Assembly (NCBI RefSeq): GCF_963921235.1
Contig: NC_086101.1
Coordinates: 12,648,001-12,712,000, forward strand
Length of the DNA: 64,000 bases
Source: Mobula hypostoma
Taxonomy: Eukaryota
Reading direction: 5' to 3'
Part shown: positions 26,511 through 45,357 of the stretch, in pieces
Layout of the letters: every line of letters begins with the position of its first letter
Position numbering within the stretch: position 1 is the first letter of the stretch
The notes under the pieces: generated by a model
Database searches by the model: none
Told to the model about the DNA's origin: nothing
Seen by the model: the letters and a program-made list of their open reading frames with translations, nothing else
Position numbers and translations under genes: made by a program

Positions 26511-27544
26511 GGGACAGGCCTCCAGGGGACTCGCAACAGCTTCTGATCCTATTACCGATGTAAACCGGTCTTTGCAGGAACTGCTCAATTAATGTTTTTT
26601 TTCTACTCCCACCGGCCGTACAACGTCCCCACACATCAGAATTTAGCCAGTCGTAAGGACAAAAGATTCTGCAGATACTGGAACAACACACACAAAATAC
26701 AGGTGGAACTCAGCAGGTCAGACAGCATCGATGGAAATGAACAAACAGTCGACGGTTCGGGCCGACAACCTTCTTCAGACTAGAAAGCGAGGGGAAGGAG
26801 GTGGGGGAGGGGAAGGAGCACAGTCTAAAAGGTGACAGGTAAAGGCGTGGTGGTGGTGTGGTGGGGGGGGGGTGGGGAGCTGGGGAGGTGGATGGTGAGA
26901 ATCTGGGAGCTGAAGGGCCGGAGACGAAGTAATTTCGATGGAAGAATGTTGGAGTTGAATCTCCTCATGTCGAGGTTTTGATCAGATTACAAAAGCTCGC
27001 AGTTTTTCCCCTCTCCCACACATTCACTGACCCTCACACATTCATAATATACACAAGGACTTGATTGGCTCCCATTCACTAGGCTCAACATCCATTAAGC
27101 GGCCGCAGTATGTGCCCACGAGAAAATGTTACTAACTTAACTACCCCAATAGCGTCTGCCAATTTTCTATATGTCGCTAAACGAGTCCGTTTCGGCACAT
27201 CGTGTTTCACCGAATGACTTAATCGCCCCTCTCCGCCAAAGGCACACATTCCCATCAACTTACAACGGCAAATAAGCCTACCGATTTCCCTCTCTTTTTT
27301 GGGGGGGGATGTGGGGTATTGACTCTGCCTGGTGCACCTATGTGTCTCCCAACCTCTCCCTCCAAGATGTGCAAGAGCGGGGGGCGCACGGGAAAACGGC
27401 CGATCGCAAATTCCGCTTAAAGTCCAATACCAAACTGAGCTGGAAATATATCTTTGGACCTTCGTCGGTGCAGAGTTTAAACCCTTTGGCCTCAAACCCG
27501 ACAGCTGGAGTACTTTCAAGAGCGATTTTCGAAAGTGAATTATA

Positions 27545-29747: not shown

Positions 29748-30453
29748 TTAAGACACGTTTAAACAAAATGTACACGCCTAAGGATTTTAAAGATTTATCA
29801 GTTGTGACTAAACGAAACCGCTCTATCGAAATACTGTATTGGCAATGTGGACAATCTCGCCCTCTGCAAAGATTGAGGGACGAAATTGCAGGTAATGGTC
29901 GGAAATTTTCTGTCTCTAGTTAAGTAATTGCAGCCCATTGTAAATCTGTTACGAATCAATGTAACATAATATGAAAGCGGACCTGGATGAGGACACCAAT
30001 GAATTCAGTAGCCGATTAATTTCGTGCATGCCTGTCCACTATTTATAACATAATAAATATTATAAAATAACATCAAAACCGATATTTTTCAAATTCCATA
30101 ACAAATACGTTTTAAATCATGTCAGGTAAATAAAAATTACTCGGCAAACATGAGTGAATACCTTGCCCCGCTTTTTCTTCCGGTTATCGAGGGAACGGCA
30201 TGATTTGAGGTTCAATGGACCCTAAAGAAAACATTCGCGGGAAAAGCAAATAAAATTAAAGCATTTTGAAAGCATGATTTTTTATCAATTAACTCACTGA
30301 ACTAGTTTTTTAAATAGCATTTGGCCGTCGTGAATTTTCAGAAAATTGCATTGTTTGTCTTTGATCGGGCGCTGTTATTTGACTCCAGGAGTCGATGCTC
30401 GAGTACGTTATTACTCATACTGTAGGTATAGCCGCGTTTTGAACTGGATGGGT

Positions 30454-30469
30454 GGCTCTTAAAAGAGCC
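30454..30469 (-). terminator. Histone mRNA 3' stem-loop (H2B copy 1)
   Basis: Minus strand AAAC-GGCTCTTTTAAGAGCC-ACCCA. Confidence 0.95.
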
Positions 30470-30503
30470 GTTTGGCGATTTAATCGCATCTTTCAAGGGT
30501 AAT

Positions 30504-30914
30504 CTACTTGGAGCTGGTATATTTGGTGACGGCTTTCGTGCCTTCAGAGACGGCGTGTTTAGCCAGTTCCCCAGGAAGCAGAAGACGGACGGCGCTCTGG
30601 ACCTCTCGGGAGGAGATGGTCTGGCGACGGGTGTAATGCACCAGACGGGAAGCCTCGGACGCAATACGCTCAAAGATGTCGCTGACAAATGAGTGGATGA
30701 CACTCATGGCCTTGGAAGAAATACCGGTGTCTGGGTGAACCTGCTTCAGTACTTTGTAGATATAGATGCTGTAGCTCTCCTTCCTGCTCCTCCTGTGCTT
30801 CTTATCGCCTTTCCTGCTCATTTTCATAGCAGTCTTCTTAGAGCCCTTTTTCGAAACGGCGCCTTTACCTCCGCCTGCCGTGACGCTGGTAGTACCCGAA
30901 ACAGTAGTTGGCAT
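30504..30914 (-). CDS. Divergent histone H2B, copy 1 (136 aa)
   Basis: [27 protein letters not shown]...[26 protein letters not shown]; intronless; stem-loop and H2B-type promoter present. Confidence 0.95.
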
Positions 30915-30976
30915 TGTGTAACTCTTGCTGACTTACACACCAAAAATCAAGCAATACGCAATCGCCTGCTTCTCTC

Positions 30977-31050
30977 TTATATATACAGAGCTATGCAAAT
31001 AATCAAAGCACGATGCAAATGAAGGATGGCAGATTGTCCGTTCCGATTGG
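30977..31050 (-). promoter_or_regulatory. H2B promoter: TATA, two octamers, CCAAT
   Basis: Minus strand TATATATAA (30977-30985), ATTTGCAT (30993-31000, 31013-31020), CCAAT (31046-31050). Confidence 0.85.
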
Positions 31051-31912
31051 TTACTTTGTGCAAACCTCTGAACGGACGTGCTCTGGTGTCACTACTTCAC
31101 CCGCCCGATAGCGTTTGCTTTGCAAGAAATTCGGTGTGAAAGAATCTCAGGAGAGAGAGAGAGAAAAATTAAGGTAATGTTTAGGACGAAAATACAACCC
31201 CTGACCATCTTTACAATGAGTTAACATTACAAATAACAGAAATACTAACATTGGGAGATACTAACATTTCTCATGATTGGGGGATGAAAATGTTTTGTTT
31301 AAATCGATGGCCTTTTTCATGAATTGAGAATGTTTGGAGAGAAAATTGGGATAAGATGAGGAATAGTGAGAGGGCTGTGGGTGAGGGGAAAGAAGGGAGC
31401 AAAAAAAGGAGTAGTTAAGTCAAGAGAGATCAAACCAACAAAGGAGTATTTTCAGCATTTTCTGTTTTATTTCAGAATCTAGCAACTGCAATACTTTGTT
31501 TTACGATGAATTTTAATTAAATCTGCGTAATGGAAAGATACGACAGTAATCAATTCACAGTACTTAGACAGAAAATACAACAAAGGACAATATTTAATAA
31601 ATAAAAAATGTACATTGTCTTCTCTGTCTGCTTATCGCCCCGCTGGAGTTGACTACGGATATGGAATTATAAAGCAACGGCCCTTTGGCCAAACATGCCG
31701 ATACTGGCTTGTGATGGTGTGCTGCAATTTGTCATAGATGCTACTTTCCCTGCATTTTTTCCCTCTATTCAAATCCCTTTTGGAAGTTGCAATCAAACTC
31801 AGGTCATTTATCGCCTGAAGAGCCTCAACGTGTCTTATGATTCGGCCAGGTAGCTTCTGTGCAGAGGATACTGATGATGAATTCTGAAGAAGGGACATAT
31901 TGGAAATATTTA

Positions 31913-31991
31913 AAAACGCAAACACGAGGAAATCTGCAGATGCTGGAAATTCAAGCAACACACACACACAGCAGCATTTTGTGTGTGTTGC
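31913..31991. mobile_element. 79-bp Penelope-derived insertion present only in duplication unit 1
   Basis: 13-bp direct repeat TTGGAAATATTTA (31900-31912, 31992-32004); the paralogous site in unit 2 (~34213) is empty. Confidence 0.8.
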
Positions 31992-32810
31992 TTGGAAATA
32001 TTTAGTTAGTTAATCTCCGTCTGCGTCATTAACTCTCTAATCAATACAGACTAAGTGCTCTTTTAGACGGTCCCTGCTAAATTTGTGACAGTTCGCGTCA
32101 CTGCCTCTCCAACCAATACAGTTAAAGTTCTTCAGAAACCCCCTACCAAAATTAATGCAAGCTCAAAATATTGCGAAAGCTGTACTGGCAATATGGGCAA
32201 TCTTGCCCTCTGCAAAGATTGAGAAGGTCGAAATTGCAGGTACTGGTCGGAAATTTTCTTTCTCTAGTTAAGTAATTGCAGCCCATCGTAAATCTGTTAC
32301 GAATCAATGTAACATAATACGACAGCGGACCTGGATGAGGACACCAATGAATTCAGTAGCCGATTAATTTTGTGCATGCCTGTCCACTGCTATTTATAAC
32401 ATAATAAATATTATAAAATAATAAAATCAAAACCGATATTTTTCAAATTCCATACCAACAAATCCGTTTTAAATCATACGTCAGGTAAATAAAAATCACT
32501 CGGCAAACATGAGTGAATACCTTGCCCCGCTTTTTCTTCCGGTTATCGAGGGAACGGCATGATCTAAGTTGAGGTTCAATGGACCCTAAAGAAAACATTC
32601 GCGCGAAAAGCAAGGCATTTTGAAAGCATGCTTTTTATCTATTAACTGACGGAACTACATAGTTTTTAAAATAGCATTTGGCCGTCGTGAATTTTCAGAA
32701 AATTGCATTGTTTGTCTTTGATCGGGCGCTGTTATTTGACTCCAGGAGTCGATGCTCGAGTACGTTATTACTCATACTGTAGGTATAGCCGCTGTTTGGA
32801 CTGAATGAGT

Positions 32811-32826
32811 GGCTCTTAAAAGAGCC
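32811..32826 (-). terminator. Histone mRNA 3' stem-loop (H2B copy 2)
   Basis: GGCTCTTTTAAGAGCC on the minus strand. Confidence 0.95.
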
Positions 32827-32860
32827 GTTTGGCGATCTAATCGCATCTTTCAAGGGTAAG

Positions 32861-33271
32861 CTACTTGGAGCTGGTATATTTGGTGACGGCTTTCGTGCCT
32901 TCAGAGACGGCGTGTTTGGCCAGTTCCCCAGGAAGCAGAAGACGGACGGCGCTCTGGACCTCTCGGGAGGAGATGGTCTGGCGACGGGTGTAATGCGCCA
33001 GACGGGAAGCCTCGGACGCAATACGCTCGAAGATGTCGCTGACAAATGAGTGGATGACACTCATGGCCTTGGAAGAGATACCGGTGTCTGGGTGAACCTG
33101 CTTCAGTACTTTGTAGATATAGATGCTGTAGCTCTCCTTCCTGCTCCTCCTGCGTTTCCTACCGCCTTTCTTGCTCATTTTCATAGCAGTTTTCTTAGAG
33201 CCCTTTTTCAAAACGGCACCTTTACCTCCGACTGCCGTGACGCTGGTAGAACCCGAAACAGCAGTTGGCAT
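32861..33271 (-). CDS. Divergent histone H2B, copy 2 (136 aa)
   Basis: Intact ORF with stem-loop, TATA (33334-33342), distal octamer (33370-33377) and CCAAT (33403-33407); proximal octamer mutated. Confidence 0.95.
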
Positions 33272-34529
33272 TGTGTAACTCTTGCTGACTTACACACCAA
33301 AAATCAAGTAACACGCAATCGGCTGCTTCTCTCTTATATATACAGAGCTATGCAACTAATCAAAGCACGATGCAAATGAAGGATGGCAGATTGTCCGTTC
33401 CGATTGGTTACTTTGTGCAAACCTCTGAATGGACGTGCTCTGGTGTCACTACTTCACCCGCCCGATAGCGTTTGGGAATGCGAGAGCAAGAGAGAGAGGA
33501 AAAAACATTTTAAAATAATGTTTAGGACGAAAATACACCCCCTGACCGTCTTTACAGTAAGCTAACATTACAACTAAAAGAAATACTGACATTGGGAGAT
33601 GAAAACGCTTTGTTTAAATCGATGGCCTTTTACATGAATTGAGAATGTTTGGAGAGAAAACTGGGTTAAGATGAGGAATGGTGAGGGGGCTGTGGGTGAG
33701 GGGAAAGAAGGGAGCAAAAAAGGAGTAGTTAAGTCAGGAGAAATCAAACCAGCAAAAGAATATTTTCAGCATTTTCTGTTTTATTTCAGAATCTAGCAAC
33801 TGTAATACTTTGTTGTACGATGAATTTTAATTAAATCTGCGTAATGGAAAGATACGACAGTAACCAATTCACAGTGCTTAGACAGAAAATACAACAAAGG
33901 ACAATATTTAATAAATAAAAAATGTACATTGTCTTCTCTGTCTGCTTATCGCCCCGCTGGAGTTGACTACGGATATGGAATCATAAAGCAACGGCCCTTT
34001 GGCCAAACATGCCGATACTGGCTTGTGATGGTGTGCTGCAATTTGTCATAGATGCTAGTTTCCCTGCATTTTTTCCCTCTATTCAAATCCCTTTTGGAAG
34101 TTGCAATCAAACTCAGGTCATTTATCGCCTGAAGGGTATCAACGTGTCTTATGATTCGGCCAGGTAGCTTCTGTGCAGAGGACACTGATGATGAATTCTG
34201 AAGAAGGAACATATTGGAAATACTTAGTTAGTTAATCTCCTCCATCTGCGTCATTAACTCTCTAATCAATAGACTAACTGCTGCTTTAGACGATCCCAAC
34301 TAAATTTGTGACAGTTCGCGTCACTGCCTCTCCAACCAATACATTTTTATCAATTAACTCACTGAACTACAAACATCCAGTTTTTAAAATAAAGCATTTG
34401 GCCGTCGTGAATTTTCAGAAAATTGCATTGTTTGTCCTTGATCGGGCGCTGTCGTTTGACTCCAGGAGTCGATGCTTAAATATGTATTACTCATACTGTA
34501 GGTATAGCCGCGTTTTGGACTGGGTGAGT

Positions 34530-34545
34530 GGCTCTTAAAAGAGCC
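34530..34545 (-). terminator. Histone mRNA 3' stem-loop (H2B copy 3)
   Basis: GGCTCTTTTAAGAGCC on the minus strand. Confidence 0.9.
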
Positions 34546-34579
34546 GTTTGGCGATTTAATCGCATCTTTCAAGGGTAAT

Positions 34580-34962
34580 CTACTTGGAGCCTGTATATTT
34601 GGTGATGGTTTTCGTGCCTTCAGAGACGGCGTGTTTAGCCAGTTCCCCAGGAAGCAGAGGGCGGACGGCGCTCTGGACCTCTCGGGAGGAGATGGTCTGG
34701 CGACGGGTGTAATGCACCAGACGGGAAGCCTCGGACGCAATACGCTCGAAGATGTCGCTGACGAATGAAATACCAGTGTCTGGGTGAACCTGCTTCAGCA
34801 CTTTGTAGATATAGATGCTGTAGCTCTCCTTCCTGCTCCTCCTGTGCTTCTTATCGCCTTTCCTGCTCATTTCATAGCAGTTTTCTTAGAGCCCTTTTTC
34901 GAAACGGCGCCTTTACCTCCGCCTGCCGTAACACTGGTAGAACCCGAAACAGCAGTTGGCAT
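34580..34962 (-). pseudogene. Histone H2B pseudogene, copy 3
   Basis: 1-nt deletion near 34870 (frameshift), 9-codon deletion in the histone fold (GIS-FVSD), L>P in VRPLLPG, TATA box deleted. Confidence 0.9.
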
Positions 34963-36333
34963 TGCGTATATCTTGCTGACTTACACACCAAAAATCAAGC
35001 AATACTCAGTCCGCTGCTTCTCTCTACAGAGCTGTGCAAAAATCAAAGCACGATGCAAATGAAGGATGGCAGATTGTCCGTTCCGATTGGTTACTTTGTG
35101 CAAACCTCTGAACGGACGTGCTCTGGTGTCACTACTTCACCCGTCCGGTAGCGTTTGCTTTGCAAGAAATTCGGTGTGAAAGAATCTCAGGAGAGAGGGA
35201 GGGAGAGAAAGAGGGAGAGAGAGAGAGAGAGAGAGGGAGGGAGGGGGAGGGGGAGAGGGAGAGATCACTGCCTCTCTAACCGATACAGTTTAAATCCTTC
35301 AGAAACCCCCTACTAAAATTACTCCAAGCTCAAAATATTGCGAAAGCTGTGACTGGAAACATATCCGAGAATACTGTAAATATTAAAGTTGTTTAGGAAT
35401 ATTCAGGCTTTTCGGTAATCGATCTTAGGGTAATAAAAGTGATGTTGTTAGTAGATCTGCTGCCTCGTAGTTCTAGAGACCCAGGTTCAATCCTGGCCTT
35501 TGGAAATCGATGAGGATTTTATATATTCTTCGCTTCACTGCACGAGATCTCCCCCTCCCCCTCCCCCGGTGATCCTGTTTCCTCCAATGTGCCAAAGACA
35601 TTAGTACATTAATTGGTCACTGGAAATTGCCCTCGTCATAAGTAGTCGAAAGAATTGAAGGGAATTTAGAGCAAAGAGTGGAGAAAATCGTGAGATTGGT
35701 TTAGGATTAGTGTAAATTTGTGCTTGGTGGTTTGCATGAAAATGATGGATTCAAGAATCATCTCAATTTGTGCGACTCCTTAAACTGAACCATTAACGTC
35801 ACCAATTTATTAGGAACACGCACAAAATGCTGGAGGCGGCATCTATGGAAAAGAAGGTACAATACAACGTTTGGACCGAGACCCTTAGCTTCATTTTTAG
35901 AGCCATTTGATTGCCATTTTCATCGTATGAGGTTTGTCCCGTGAAATCTAGGCAGTTTGGGGTTGTACTTCTTAACGCTCAGATGAATGGGAAATAACCA
36001 TATCGAAATATACAATATCTTTCACAGGGTAGATGCTGAGTTATTACTTGTGGGAATCACGAAGTTTTCTGTGGCTGGGCATTTAATAGAGCTACGCACA
36101 ATCTTCAGCACAACGCTTCTCTGAAATCCTGAGGGTGGAGGCCAAATATTTAACTACATAAAGATCAGAATTAATTATAGTGAGCTTGCACAGAATATAG
36201 TGAATGGTGACGTAAGTTTGAGTAAACTGGGCATATTTATTTTGGTTTCGTATATTTTATTGCTTTAAATGTGCTTCTTCCTATAGAAATGTATCTGTAA
36301 CCCACAGGGCAATTTCTGTATGAAAGAGACAGT

Positions 36334-36349
36334 GGCTCTTAAAAGAGCC
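36334..36349 (-). terminator. Histone mRNA 3' stem-loop downstream of the H1 pseudogene
   Basis: AAAAC-GGCTCTTTTAAGAGCC-AC on the minus strand. Confidence 0.95.
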
Positions 36350-36359
36350 GTTTTGGCGT

Positions 36360-37057
36360 TCATTCTTGGATATGTTTCCACTTCGGAGCTTTGCTCTTCT
36401 CGGCCGTGTTGCCGACCATCAGAAGACGGGGCATTTTTAGACACCTCTCTGGCTGTTTACCCTTGGGAACTGTCACCTTGCCGGTTCGTCTTTTATGAGC
36501 GCCGGCCTTGGTTCATAAGCTTTACTCTGCGAAGCGCGTTCTTCCTCCAGGGCTTGCGCACCGCACCCTTAACTTTCGAGGTGGGCGCACCACGTTTTCG
36601 GGTCTGGAAGAACTTACCCGCCGCCCCTTTAACTACCTGGAGCTGCCGGTTGATCTTGAAAGAACCCGAGGCCCCCGTGCCAGCCGTTTGCACCAACATG
36701 CCATCAGCCACCAGGTTCCGAACCGTTTGATTCACCCGTGAATTGATGCGGGGCACATCGTAACCAGTGGCCGACAGCGCCTTCTTGACGGCGAGCAGGG
36801 AGACATCGTGGCGCTGTTTGGACAGCGTCCATGATGTGCCCGGCCACGGTCGACGGACTCCCTTGCCGGGACGTGGGCGAGTTCTTCTTTCGCTTTGCCT
36901 TGCTGCCTCGGGGCTGCTGACCCGCAGCCATTAGCAAAGGTGCGGGTGGCGCATCCGCAGAGCTCACAGACGCCACACCGACGCCCACTGGCTCCGGGCC
37001 GCCACTGAACCCGTCCGGCTGCGGCGGCCTCTTATCAGCCCTCAAAGCGGACGCCAT
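36360..37057 (-). pseudogene. Histone H1 (divergent), frameshifted
   Basis: Winged-helix split across frames: TVAGHIMDAV / KQRHDVSLLAVKKALSATGYDVPRINSRVNQTVRNLVADGMLVQTAGTGASGSFKIN; frameshift near 36820 and a probable second one near 36510. Confidence 0.85.
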
Positions 37058-44703: not shown

Positions 44704-45357
44704 TCATTGTGTTTGGATGGAGTCGGTTTCAGATCCAAATCTGTTGGGTTCGCGCTCTAATGGGCTCTTCGCAGACTTCCTGGGCTTTCTCGAGCCCCGG
44801 CGGCTCGCCAACACTTTCTTCACCCGGATGCCTTTCCAGCGGGTCGACTTTTTCACGGCGCCGTACTTTCTACGGTGCCTGCCCAGTCTCTTCACCCGCT
44901 GGCACCTCTTCCTGCCTGTTGTCCTCAGCCTTCGGGACTTCCTGGCCACCTTGGGGGTGGCTGCCGTCGTTTCCTCCGGACTGTTGCCGAGGCTGGCCGA
45001 GCCCGAGGCGTCACAGCCCACCGTTTGCTCCAGCGGTCCTTTGCTAGGCGGGCTGCGCACAGTTCGACTAACCCGCGAGTTACTGCGGGCCAAGTTATAG
45101 TCGCTGGGCGACAGCGCTTTCTTCATAGCGGCCACCGAGACCCGGCGGCGCTCCCTGGTGGATGCCACCGCCTTCATGATATGCTCGGCCACCGTACAGC
45201 CAAACTTCCTGTGCCGGTACTGCCTCCGCTTCTTTTTCACGGCCGCCGCAATGTCCAGCACCGCTGCCTCGTCGGAAGGAGACGGGACTGCAGGTGGTGG
45301 CGGGGCCGGGGCCGTCGCAGCAGAGACGTCGGTGCCCACCACTTCCGAATCTGCCAT
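44704..45357 (-). CDS. Arginine-rich histone H1-like protein (217 aa)
   Basis: Intact ORF; TVAEHIMKAVASTRERRRVSVAAMKKAL...NSRV...SKGPLEQTVGCDASGS aligns to the H1 globular domain; R/K-rich tail; CpG-rich upstream region. Confidence 0.85.
   Translation of the reverse strand: MADSEVVGTDVSAATAPAPPPPAVPSPSDEAAVLDIAAAVKKKRRQYRHRKFGCTVAEHIMKAVASTRERRRVSVAAMKKALSPSDYNLARSNSRVSRTVRSPPSKGPLEQTVGCDASGSASLGNSPEETTAATPKVARKSRRLRTTGRKRCQRVKRLGRHRRKYGAVKKSTRWKGIRVKKVLASRRGSRKPRKSAKSPLEREPNRFGSETDSIQTQ

What the first reader, a model, noticed from the sequence alone, without database searches (positions are those of the whole stretch)
30504..33271. H2B variant with an extended N-tail and testis-H2B-like histone-fold substitutions
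Seen: both intact copies have a ~10-aa longer Thr/Ser/Gly-rich N-terminus and share fold changes against canonical H2B: [10 protein letters not shown] (vs MGIMNSFVND), IASEA (vs IAGEA), [15 protein letters not shown] (vs HYNKRSTITSREIQT). The C-terminus with the ubiquitylated Lys is intact. The copies differ mostly in the tail and at only one fold residue, suggesting constraint. From my recollection of mammalian TSH2B/H2B.1, it also replaces N67, G75 and N84 with Ser/Thr and has a KGA.ISKKG.KK tail; this needs verifying. Inference: a nucleosome-destabilising variant, convergent with or anciently related to H2B.1.
Basis: partly seen in the sequence, partly recalled or inferred. Interest (0 to 1): 0.7.

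Follow-up and report, generated by a model that had tools for sequence, protein, structure and literature searches.

The report
Cartilaginous-fish H2B histone variant genes
Two intact tandem genes (plus a dead third copy) encode a histone H2B variant that sharks, rays and a chimaera have all kept next to unusual H1 genes; it only superficially resembles the mammalian testis histone H2B.1, and where it is expressed is still unknown.

Summary
Two intact 136-aa H2B genes lie at 30504-30914 and 32861-33271 (minus strand) in a 2357-bp tandem repeat. A third copy is a pseudogene. Each intact gene has a CCAAT-octamer-TATA promoter and a histone 3' stem-loop.

The protein belongs to a clade found in over 20 shark, ray and chimaera species. 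Its fold is under purifying selection (dN/dS 0.04-0.25). In five shark and chimaera genera it lies downstream of H1-variant genes on the same strand, as in the window.

Eight fold positions separate it from 57 canonical cartilaginous-fish H2Bs: L45, V61, I62, V81, T/S84, R85, Q/H87, S96.
- S67 and S75 vary within the clade.
- H63 and V94 are ray-lineage specific.
- G60S and T90S are already canonical in these fishes.
- Only N84 to T/S is clade-wide. In human H2B.1 the N84S change abolishes an H2B-H4 contact.

The full-length tree nests the variant among cartilaginous-fish H2Bs and H2B.1 among tetrapod H2Bs, but a joint clade is not rejected (p-AU 0.165). Convergence is favoured, not proven.

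The possible RNA runs examined showed no coverage of these genes, so a germline role and nucleosome destabilisation remain inference.

The scan had noted this cluster before, on this same window.

The parts
30504..30914 (-). H2B variant gene, copy 1, intact 136-aa coding sequence without intron
   Evidence: ORF. Pfam Histone E 2.5e-21. One residue different from Mobula birostris P0122.
30430..30474 (-). Histone 3' stem-loop of copy 1, followed by a conserved GGCTATA element (candidate downstream element)
   Evidence: Rfam RF00032, 34.1 bits against a gathering score of 34. Conserved in six species.
30976..31050 (-). Promoter module of copy 1: CCAAT 31046-31050, octamer ATTTGCAT 31013-31020 and 30993-31000, TATA 30976-30985
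   Evidence: Read from the sequence. CCAAT, octamer and TATA are conserved in seven genes of six species.
32861..33271 (-). H2B variant gene, copy 2, intact 136-aa coding sequence
   Evidence: ORF. Pfam Histone E 4.1e-21. Its first 134 residues equal the start of NCBI model P0125 of Mobula hypostoma.
32787..32831 (-). Histone 3' stem-loop of copy 2
   Evidence: Rfam RF00032, 34.8 bits.
33333..33407 (-). Promoter module of copy 2 (CCAAT, octamer, degenerate second octamer AGTTGCAT, TATA)
   Evidence: Alignment A1, shifted by the 2357-bp repeat.
34580..34962 (-). Copy 3, a pseudogene: TATA box deleted (7 bp), 1-bp frameshift in the tail, 27-bp in-frame deletion removing SSKAMSVIH, and several replacements
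   Evidence: Alignment A1 and tblastn. The orthologous third copy is intact in Mobula birostris (P0126).
34506..34550 (-). Histone 3' stem-loop of copy 3
   Evidence: Rfam RF00032, 34.1 bits.
36310..37057 (-). Neighbouring H1-variant gene ('H1b'), with its own stem-loop at 36310-36354. Its globular domain is split over two reading frames in this assembly.
   Evidence: tblastn with the Heptranchias H1b gives 67% over 63 aa at 36822-36634. ORFs in two frames. Stem-loop.
44704..45357 (-). Neighbouring arginine-rich H1-variant gene ('H1a'), the outer member of the conserved H1a-H1b-H2B variant order
   Evidence: Pfam Linker_histone E 4.8e-06. 48% identity over 217 aa to the Heptranchias H1a that lies at the same relative place.

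Best explanation
**Shown.** These are two functional copies, plus one dead copy, of an H2B variant specific to cartilaginous fishes.
- The variant arose by duplication of an H2B gene no later than the split of chimaeras from sharks and rays.
- It has since been kept at 1-3 copies.
- In five shark and chimaera genera it lies just downstream of H1-variant genes on the same strand.
- Its fold is under purifying selection.
- It keeps the classical H2B promoter (CCAAT, Oct-1 octamer, TATA) and the stem-loop 3' end. Its mRNA should therefore be made and processed like replication-type histone mRNA.

**Inferred.** The protein builds ordinary H2A-H2B dimers and nucleosomes. Five of the eight clade-defining changes (V81, T/S84, R85, Q/H87, S96) cluster in the end of helix alpha2, loop L2 and helix alpha3, which from general knowledge of the nucleosome contacts H4 and DNA. 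Loss of Asn84 should remove the water-mediated bond to H4 Arg78, as in human TSH2B. That would loosen the dimer on the H3-H4 tetramer.

Elasmobranchs also added an uncharged Ser/Thr/Ala-rich extension of 20-41 residues and a fixed TAMKM motif around the Lys that aligns with human K20. These probably change tail modification or reader binding.

**Most likely use (unproven).** Specialised germline chromatin, together with the adjacent H1 variants, for example easing histone removal before protamine deposition in spermatids.

The likeness to mammalian H2B.1 is best read as parallel change at a few tolerant positions, not common descent.
For: **Reality and anatomy:**

**Distribution.** Orthologues occur in Mobula (2 species), Hemitrygon, Hypanus, Pristis, Leucoraja, Rhinoraja, Amblyraja, Narcine, Heptranchias, Pristiophorus, Heterodontus, Carcharodon, Cetorhinus, Scyliorhinus (2 species), Mustelus, Rhincodon, Chiloscyllium (2 species), Hemiscyllium and Callorhinchus.

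**Clade.** Support is 100/96* on the full-length tree and 99/87* on the fold alone.

**Diagnostic residues.** These are fixed against 57 canonical sequences. Among the 393 proteins retrieved, the S96 and HY[TS]RR signatures occur only in proteins of this clade.

**Selection.** Fold dN/dS is 0.04-0.25 across six aligned coding sequences.

**Synteny.** H1 variants lie upstream on the same strand in Carcharodon, Callorhinchus, Heptranchias, Scyliorhinus (2 species) and the window.

**Regulatory signals.** The promoter and the stem-loop plus downstream element are conserved.

**Copy history.** The copies predate the split of the two Mobula species, and the same spacing is seen in M. birostris.

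**Structure.** N84S is the only TSH2B substitution with a local structural effect, the loss of the H4 R78 contact (PMC3976059). Helix boundaries come from the predicted secondary structure.

**Origin.** The variant nests with cartilaginous-fish canonical H2B (98/87*). It sits nearest the 'H2B 7' type, which shares the tail motif KKGSKKT.
Against: - No expression evidence. Contigs of four possible RNA runs from this species and a close relative do not touch any of the three copies. Tissue, stage and even transcription are therefore unshown. The stem-loop mRNA would also be lost from poly(A)-selected libraries, so the absence says little.
- No biochemical data on stability.
- TSH2B nucleosomes were reported to be about as stable as canonical ones. 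Only the octamer was unstable (Li et al. 2005, as cited in PMC3976059).
- A promoter and 3' end of the replication type fit an ordinary S-phase histone equally well.
- The phylogenetic signal is thin. The fold-only free search joined the variant to H2B.1 (94/93), and the AU test does not reject that union on the full-length data (p 0.165).
- This species' own canonical H2B was not obtained.
Confidence: 0.6

Rival explanations
1. The gene is an ancient orthologue or close relative of mammalian H2B.1 (TH2B/TSH2B). On this reading a testis H2B existed in the jawed-vertebrate ancestor and survived in cartilaginous fishes and eutherians.
For: - Shared non-canonical states at positions 67, 75 and 84, and a KGA.(I)SKKG.KK-like tail motif.
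- Both keep the octamer promoter and the stem-loop.
- Gorilla H2B.1 is the best hit outside cartilaginous fishes, at 198 bits against 196-197 for canonical H2B.
- The fold-only free tree joined them (94/93).
- The AU test does not reject one clade (p 0.165).
- NCBI's pipeline names many orthologues 'H2B type 1-A-like'.
Against: - The full-length tree separates them with starred support: the variant plus cartilaginous-fish canonical H2B at 98/87*, and H2B.1 among tetrapod H2Bs at 98/95*.
- On the fold alone, constrained trees that keep H2B.1 alone, or the variant with cartilaginous-fish canonical H2B, have higher likelihood than the free tree.
- In the first fold-only tree, which still held two mis-extracted rows, the variant sat inside H2B.1 next to primates. 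That fits homoplasy, not orthology.
- H2B.1 is reported only from eutherians and is absent at the syntenic site in marsupials, platypus and chicken (PMC8857922).
- Asn84 is retained in 19 of 28 H2B.1 proteins, including afrotherians. Non-Asn84 therefore arose inside mammals.
- With H2B.1 as query, no variant protein reached the top 120 hits, while sauropsid canonical H2Bs did.
- H2B.1 is paired with H2A.1. No H2A gene lies in this window.
Confidence: 0.07
2. It is an oocyte or early-embryo H2B, stored maternally in the manner of cleavage-stage histones, rather than a spermatogenic one.
For: - Stem-loop histone mRNAs are the kind stored in oocytes of other vertebrates (general knowledge).
- Two mammalian H2B variants are oocyte-enriched (PMC8857922).
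- The gene sits in a cluster of divergent H1 genes, and vertebrate oocytes use special H1s.
- No tissue data argue against it.
Against: - No expression data either way.
- The one structurally understood change (N84) parallels a testis variant.
Confidence: 0.2
3. It is an ordinary replication-dependent H2B isoform with no special function. On this reading it is a minor gene copy that escaped homogenisation with the main arrays and drifted at tolerant positions.
For: - A classical H2B promoter and stem-loop, and no intron.
- 82-86% identity to skate canonical H2B over residues 9-124.
- Several changed positions (67, 75) also vary among canonical H2Bs.
Against: - Eight positions are fixed or nearly fixed in 30 proteins of over 20 species, against 57 canonical ones.
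- A long stem branch is followed by strong constraint, with dN/dS 0.04-0.25.
- The clade is retained in every cartilaginous-fish genome that appeared in the searches.
- The H1-variant neighbourhood is conserved across both subclasses of cartilaginous fishes.
- The tail has a conserved new motif (TAMKM) and an extension that is always kept.
Confidence: 0.13

Closest known systems
Mammalian H2B.1 (TH2B / TSH2B, gene H2BC1)
   Same: - An intron-less H2B variant that stays close to canonical H2B in the fold.
- It keeps the octamer promoter and the 3' stem-loop.
- Most differences lie in the N-tail, including a Ser/Thr-rich start and a KGA..SKKG motif.
- It carries non-canonical residues at positions 67, 75 and, in some lineages, 84.
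- It duplicates in tandem at its own locus and evolves faster than canonical H2B.
   Different: - H2B.1 is restricted to eutherians and is paired head to head with H2A.1 (PMC8857922). The variant here is restricted to cartilaginous fishes, sits beside H1 variants and has no H2A partner.
- The clade-defining residues here (V61, I62, V81, R85, Q87, S96) are absent from H2B.1.
- Position 84 is fixed here but changed in only 9 of 28 H2B.1 proteins.
- The N-extension is 20-41 residues here, against about 2 extra residues in H2B.1.
- Testis expression is shown for H2B.1 and is unknown here.
Canonical replication-dependent H2B of cartilaginous fishes, especially the 'H2B 7' type (P0059, P0152)
   Same: The same gene architecture (promoter, stem-loop, no intron). 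They share I39, I41, S60, S90 and the tail motif KKGSKKT. These are the nearest relatives in the full-length tree.
   Different: Canonical H2B has M45, I61, M62, A81, N84, K85 and T96, and a short charged N-terminus. It lies in multi-copy arrays elsewhere in the genome.
H2B.K and H2B.N (oocyte-enriched vertebrate H2B variants)
   Same: Germline-associated H2B variants. H2B.K is the only described H2B variant old enough to overlap in age (before bony vertebrates, PMC8857922).
   Different: H2B.K and H2B.N carry an intron and mostly a poly(A) signal. The genes here have neither an intron nor a dependence on poly(A). Raman et al. searched Callorhinchus for H2B.K yet date its origin only to bony vertebrates. 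No H2B.K sequence could be retrieved here for a direct comparison.
Sperm-specific H2Bs of sea urchins and hydrozoans (SPKK-repeat tails)
   Same: An H2B with a lengthened N-terminal tail in an animal lineage.
   Different: Those tails are basic SPK(K/R) repeats that bind linker DNA (PMC9903204 abstract). The extension here is uncharged Ser/Thr/Ala/Gly with no SPKK motif.

Membership tests
Core histone H2B | Histone fold with the H2B-type C-terminal helix and end-to-end similarity to solved H2B chains | tested here: met
   Pfam PF00125 E 2.5e-21. Residues 20-136 align to residues 9-125 of H2B chains at E about 1e-57. Predicted helices lie at 48-59, 67-95, 102-112 and 116-133.
Replication-dependent-type (stem-loop) histone gene | Conserved 3' stem-loop in place of reliance on a poly(A) signal, and no intron | tested here: met
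   Rfam RF00032 at or above the gathering score behind all three copies. The same holds for the Heptranchias, Leucoraja and Pristis orthologues. The stem-loop is visible by eye in Callorhinchus and Rhincodon. The ORF is uninterrupted.
Replication-dependent-type (stem-loop) histone gene | S-phase-coupled expression | not testable with these tools
   No run holding a transcript was found.
H2B gene promoter type | Octamer ATTTGCAT between a CCAAT box and the TATA box | tested here: met
   The module is conserved in seven genes of six species.
H2B.1 (TH2B/TSH2B) | Membership of the H2B.1 clade in a phylogeny | tested here: inconclusive
   The full-length tree separates the two. The AU test does not reject a union (p 0.165). 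The fold-only data are unresolved.
H2B.1 (TH2B/TSH2B) | Head-to-head pairing with an H2A.1 gene at a shared promoter | tested here: not met
   There is no ORF of 60 aa or more on the opposite strand upstream of either copy. No H2A-type motif appears in any frame of the window (the motifs were recalled from memory). The neighbours are further H2B copies and H1 genes.
H2B.1 (TH2B/TSH2B) | Testis-specific expression | not testable with these tools
   No informative RNA data.
H2B.K / H2B.N | An intron at a fixed place relative to the histone fold | tested here: not met
   Continuous 136-aa ORFs. The defining feature is taken from PMC8857922.
H2B.K / H2B.N | Sequence grouping with H2B.K or H2B.N proteins | not tested
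   No H2B.K, L, N or W sequence was returned by any search.
SPKK-type sperm H2B | N-terminal SPK(K/R) repeats | tested here: not met
   The tails listed hold no such repeat. The extension has one charged residue.

The most novel reading that the evidence does not exclude
Cartilaginous fishes have kept a dedicated germline chromatin module of two H1 variants plus this H2B variant, with further variant histones nearby, since chimaeras split from sharks and rays. On this reading the module was invented independently of the mammalian testis histones. It reached the same solution at the H2B-H4 interface, replacement of Asn84, which also recurs in several mammalian H2B.1 lineages. That would make convergent weakening of the nucleosome before protamine deposition directly testable.
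Probability: 0.3. Interest if true: 0.7.

Novelty: new variant of a known kind. Interest (0 to 1): 0.5.

Why it matters
H2B is the core histone with the fewest known animal variants, and the standard survey (Raman et al. 2022) is centred on mammals. This H2B variant is shared by sharks, rays and a chimaera, so it predates their split, and it has its own fixed residues at the H4 and DNA contacts. It also has a new tail and conserved H1-variant neighbours. That extends the catalogue to the sister group of bony vertebrates.

It also offers a natural replicate for asking which H2B changes matter in specialised chromatin. Asn84 is replaced in every member here and repeatedly within mammalian H2B.1. 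No paper in the searched library describes the variant. Genome annotations label it only by automatic names such as 'H2B type 1-A-like'.

Tried and rejected
1. **Expression.** Two run searches found only runs guessed to be RNA, holding none of the sampled words. Laying four of them on 30380-36370 put contigs only on a short dispersed repeat at 31908-31966 and on none of the H2B copies. This gives no verdict on expression.
2. **Transcript contigs.** The exact-protein look-up for the catshark orthologue returned genome assemblies only, with no transcript-like contig.
3. **Search limited to the N-tail (residues 1-45).** It found only elasmobranch orthologues, so the tail has no relatives elsewhere.
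4. **Search of 50%-identity representatives.** It returned only canonical-like or mis-fused H2B models and no H2B.K, L, N or W. Those classes could not be put in the tree.
5. **Fold-only trees.** These were unstable. A first run contained two mis-extracted rows. The cleaned run's free search was beaten by constrained trees. I do not rely on fold-only topology.
6. **AlphaFold monomer model.** Confidence was low (mean pLDDT 54.5). Only its helix boundaries were used, and no fold search was run.
7. **This species' canonical H2B.** It was not retrievable. Earlier notes say H2B arrays lie on other pieces of the genome but give no sequence.
8. **Literature.** Searches for shark, elasmobranch or catshark H2B variants found nothing relevant.
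9. **Leucoraja in the dN/dS table.** These pairs were discarded because a one-residue C-terminal insertion put them out of register.
10. **Complex prediction.** None was run, because no binding claim is made.
Full report
**What is in the window**

The stretch 30504-33271 runs from the stop codon of one minus-strand ORF to the start codon of the next. Both ORFs are 136 aa (30504-30914 and 32861-33271). Both hit Pfam Histone PF00125 (E 2.5e-21 and 4.1e-21). Residues 20-136 align with residues 9-125 of solved H2B chains at E about 1e-57.

The two genes sit in a direct repeat with a period of 2357 bp. A third unit follows 1.7 kb further on. Its gene (about 34580-34962) has lost 7 bp of the TATA box. 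It also carries a 1-bp frameshift in the tail and a 27-bp deletion in the fold, so it is a pseudogene.

Each unit has the same anatomy:
- a CCAAT box;
- the H2B octamer ATTTGCAT, twice in copy 1;
- a TATA box about 65 nt before the ATG;
- no intron;
- an Rfam Histone3 stem-loop 30-75 nt after the stop codon.

The two proteins differ at nine residues. Eight are in residues 1-40 and one is in the fold. Six further nucleotide differences are synonymous.

The segment in front of the KKGSKK motif is 21 residues with 6-8 Ser/Thr and a single charge. Canonical cartilaginous-fish H2B has 9-11 residues there with 2-4 charges. The C-terminal AVTKYTSSK is intact.

Gorilla H2B.1 (P0055) does carry T67, S75, S84 and KGAIISKKGFKK, so the recollection about H2B.1 is right.

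These are G60S and T90S in human numbering, where the variant's residue number is the human number plus 11. Every cartilaginous-fish canonical H2B examined already has S60 and S90.

**Whose genome, and who else has the gene**

NCBI model P0125 of Mobula hypostoma starts with the first 134 residues of copy 2 and is then spliced on to part of copy 1. The window is therefore most probably from that ray.

Orthologues with the same tail and fold signature were found in many genera:
- rays: Mobula birostris (three intact copies at the same spacing), Hemitrygon, Hypanus, Pristis, Leucoraja, Rhinoraja, Amblyraja, Narcine;
- sharks: Heptranchias, Pristiophorus, Heterodontus, Carcharodon, Cetorhinus, Scyliorhinus (two species), Mustelus, Rhincodon, Chiloscyllium (two species), Hemiscyllium;
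- a chimaera: Callorhinchus, which has a canonical-length tail.

A search with the N-tail alone found only elasmobranch proteins.

**What defines the clade**

I compared 30 variant proteins, 57 canonical cartilaginous-fish H2Bs and 28 eutherian H2B.1 proteins position by position (human numbering).

| Position | Variant | Canonical |
|---|---|---|
| 45 | L, 30/30 | M, 57/57 |
| 61 | V, 26/30 | I, 57/57 |
| 62 | I, S or L, 28/30 | M, 57/57 |
| 81 | V or I, 28/30 | A, 57/57 |
| 84 | T or S, 30/30 | N, 56/57 |
| 85 | R, 29/30 | K, 55/57 |
| 87 | Q or H, 30/30 | S, Q, A, H or R (variable) |
| 96 | S, 30/30 | T, 57/57 |

- Position 67 is S in 14 and N in 11 variant proteins.
- Position 75 is S16/G6/C3/A3/I2.
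- H63 occurs only in Myliobatiformes.
- V94 occurs only in Mobula.

Within H2B.1, positions 67 and 75 are also variable, and position 84 is still Asn in 19 of 28. Among all 393 proteins fetched, the S96 and HY[TS]RR signatures occur only in proteins of this clade.

**Constraint**

Over the last 96 codons, pairwise dN/dS between Mobula, Pristis, Heptranchias, Rhincodon and Callorhinchus is 0.04-0.25. dS is 0.28-1.08 (the Leucoraja pairs are out of register and were discarded).

Copy 1 differs from its M. birostris orthologue by one residue. Copy 2 differs from its orthologue by four. In the tree, copy 1 pairs with birostris b (97/76) and copy 2 with birostris a (100/96*). The duplication is therefore older than the two species, and the copies have not been homogenised since.

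The tail is freer. Eight of the nine replacements between the two copies fall there. The extension varies from 20 to 41 residues, with poly-Ala in skates and poly-Ser/Ala in carpet sharks. It always starts with MPT, stays uncharged and is followed by the fixed motif [11 protein letters not shown].

**Regulatory signals are conserved**

Seven genes of six species share CCAAT, then about 15 nt, then ATCCTTCATTTGCAT, then about 8 nt, then TATATMAG. They also share the stem-loop GGCTCTTTTAAGAGCC, followed about 15 nt later by GGGCTATA or a close variant. From its position, this is probably the downstream element for 3' processing. That last point is an inference.

The gene is therefore built like a replication-type histone gene. 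This is also true of mammalian H2B.1.

**Neighbourhood**

In Heptranchias the order is H1a, H1b, H2B variant, all on one strand. Other species give the same picture:
- Carcharodon and both Scyliorhinus species have a linker-histone gene 1.3-4 kb upstream.
- Callorhinchus has three H1 variants and an H4 upstream, and a second, more divergent H2B 1 kb downstream.
- In Rhincodon the two H1 genes lie downstream instead.
- In the window, tblastn places the H1b orthologue at 36.6-36.8 kb and the H1a orthologue at 44704-45357, upstream on the same strand.

No H2A, H3 or H4 gene lies in the window. Earlier notes of this scan report an H3 variant and another H1 derivative just beyond the window's end. 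I did not check these.

**Relation to H2B.1**

*Full-length tree.* The alignment had 127 kept columns.
- The variant forms a clade (100/96*).
- It lies inside cartilaginous-fish H2B (98/87*), next to the 'H2B 7' type, which shares KKGSKKT in the tail.
- H2B.1 forms its own clade (98/95*) among tetrapod H2Bs.
- Forcing the variant and H2B.1 together costs 12.3 log-likelihood units, but p-AU is 0.165, so the union is not rejected.

*Fold alone.* On 96 columns the free search joined the two (94/93). However, constrained trees with the variant beside cartilaginous-fish canonical H2B, or with H2B.1 alone, had higher likelihood. In a first run, which still held two mis-extracted rows, the variant sat inside H2B.1 next to primates. 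That pattern fits homoplasy and not orthology.

*Overlap of changed positions.* Three shared positions, out of 12 and 7 changed ones, gives P = 0.045 if all 92 fold positions are equally free. It gives P = 0.74 if only the 26 positions that vary at all are counted.

*Evidence outside the sequences.*
- Raman et al. 2022 place the birth of H2B.1 in the eutherian ancestor and find it paired with H2A.1.
- With H2B.1 as query, sauropsid canonical H2Bs outrank every variant protein.
- Asn84 is kept by afrotherian, rodent, bat and bovid H2B.1, so its loss in primates, camels, whales and pangolins happened inside mammals.

I conclude that independent origin with parallel change is the better reading. 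Common descent is unlikely but not formally excluded.

**Mechanism**

The model's secondary structure places the diagnostic positions as follows: L45 in alpha1; V61 and I62 early in alpha2; V81 and T84 at the end of alpha2; R85 and Q87 in loop L2; and S96 in alpha3.

From general knowledge of the nucleosome, the end of alpha2 and alpha3 form the four-helix bundle with H4, and L2 touches DNA. Only one of these positions has direct structural evidence. In human TSH2B, replacing Asn84 by Ser removes the water-mediated hydrogen bonds to H4 Arg78. It is the only TSH2B substitution that changes local structure (PMC3976059).

The same paper recalls that the TSH2B octamer is unstable while the nucleosome is about as stable as the canonical one. 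Any destabilisation here may therefore be modest.

The steps from 'T/S84 is fixed' to 'weaker dimer-tetramer contact' to 'easier histone removal' are all inference.

**Expression**

None could be shown. The only candidate RNA runs of this species and a close relative hold none of the sampled words. Their contigs cover none of the three copies. Their status as RNA is itself a guess, and stem-loop mRNAs are lost from poly(A)-selected libraries.

No paper in the library describes an H2B variant of cartilaginous fishes.

**Verdict**

This is a real, selectively maintained H2B variant shared by sharks, rays and a chimaera, so it is at least as old as their split. It has a conserved H1-variant neighbourhood.
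- The likeness to H2B.1 is real at the level of this species, but most of it dissolves at the level of the clades.
- The functional reading (germline use, weakened H2B-H4 contact) is plausible and untested.

Noticed in passing
window 36310-37057 (-): The H1-variant gene next to the H2B array (orthologue of the Heptranchias 'H1b') has its globular domain split between two reading frames (ORFs 36704-37057 and 36493-36756). It ends about 140 nt before its own stem-loop at 36310-36354. It is either a pseudogene in this species or an assembly error.
   Followed up: partly
L001:11101-11610 (+) and L003:20089-20358 (-): A second, much more divergent H2B variant lies near the first in Callorhinchus (1 kb downstream) and Leucoraja (10 kb downstream). 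It has HPN instead of HPD, an arginine-rich tail and ends in KYTSCK. No counterpart was found in this window.
   Followed up: partly
window 31908-31966: A stretch of about 57 bp inside the spacer of the tandem repeat attracted thousands of contigs from all four runs laid, with summed depths of about 80,000-180,000. It is a very abundant dispersed repeat, probably a SINE or LINE tail.
   Followed up: no
P0054 and P0393 (Hemitrygon akajei, Hypanus sabinus): Stingrays carry an extra, older paralogue of the variant with a different tail (MLTADAVSTNGTAESS...) and further fold changes (S53, I59, L62, F100). It is shared by both genera.
   Followed up: no
P0037, P0388 and P0386 (Rhincodon, Chiloscyllium, Hemiscyllium): In carpet sharks the uncharged N-extension has doubled to about 40 residues of Ser/Ala. 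The basic stretch has become arginine-rich (RRHRRNRRR). In Rhincodon an AATAAA sits directly in front of the stem-loop.
   Followed up: partly
(position 45): Canonical H2B of cartilaginous fishes and lamprey has Met at human position 45. The variant and all bony-vertebrate H2Bs examined have Leu. It is not known whether the variant kept an older state or reverted.
   Followed up: no
window 25715-26700: A simple-sequence tract (translated as SLSLSH...) next to a run of N lies just upstream of the histone cluster.
   Followed up: no
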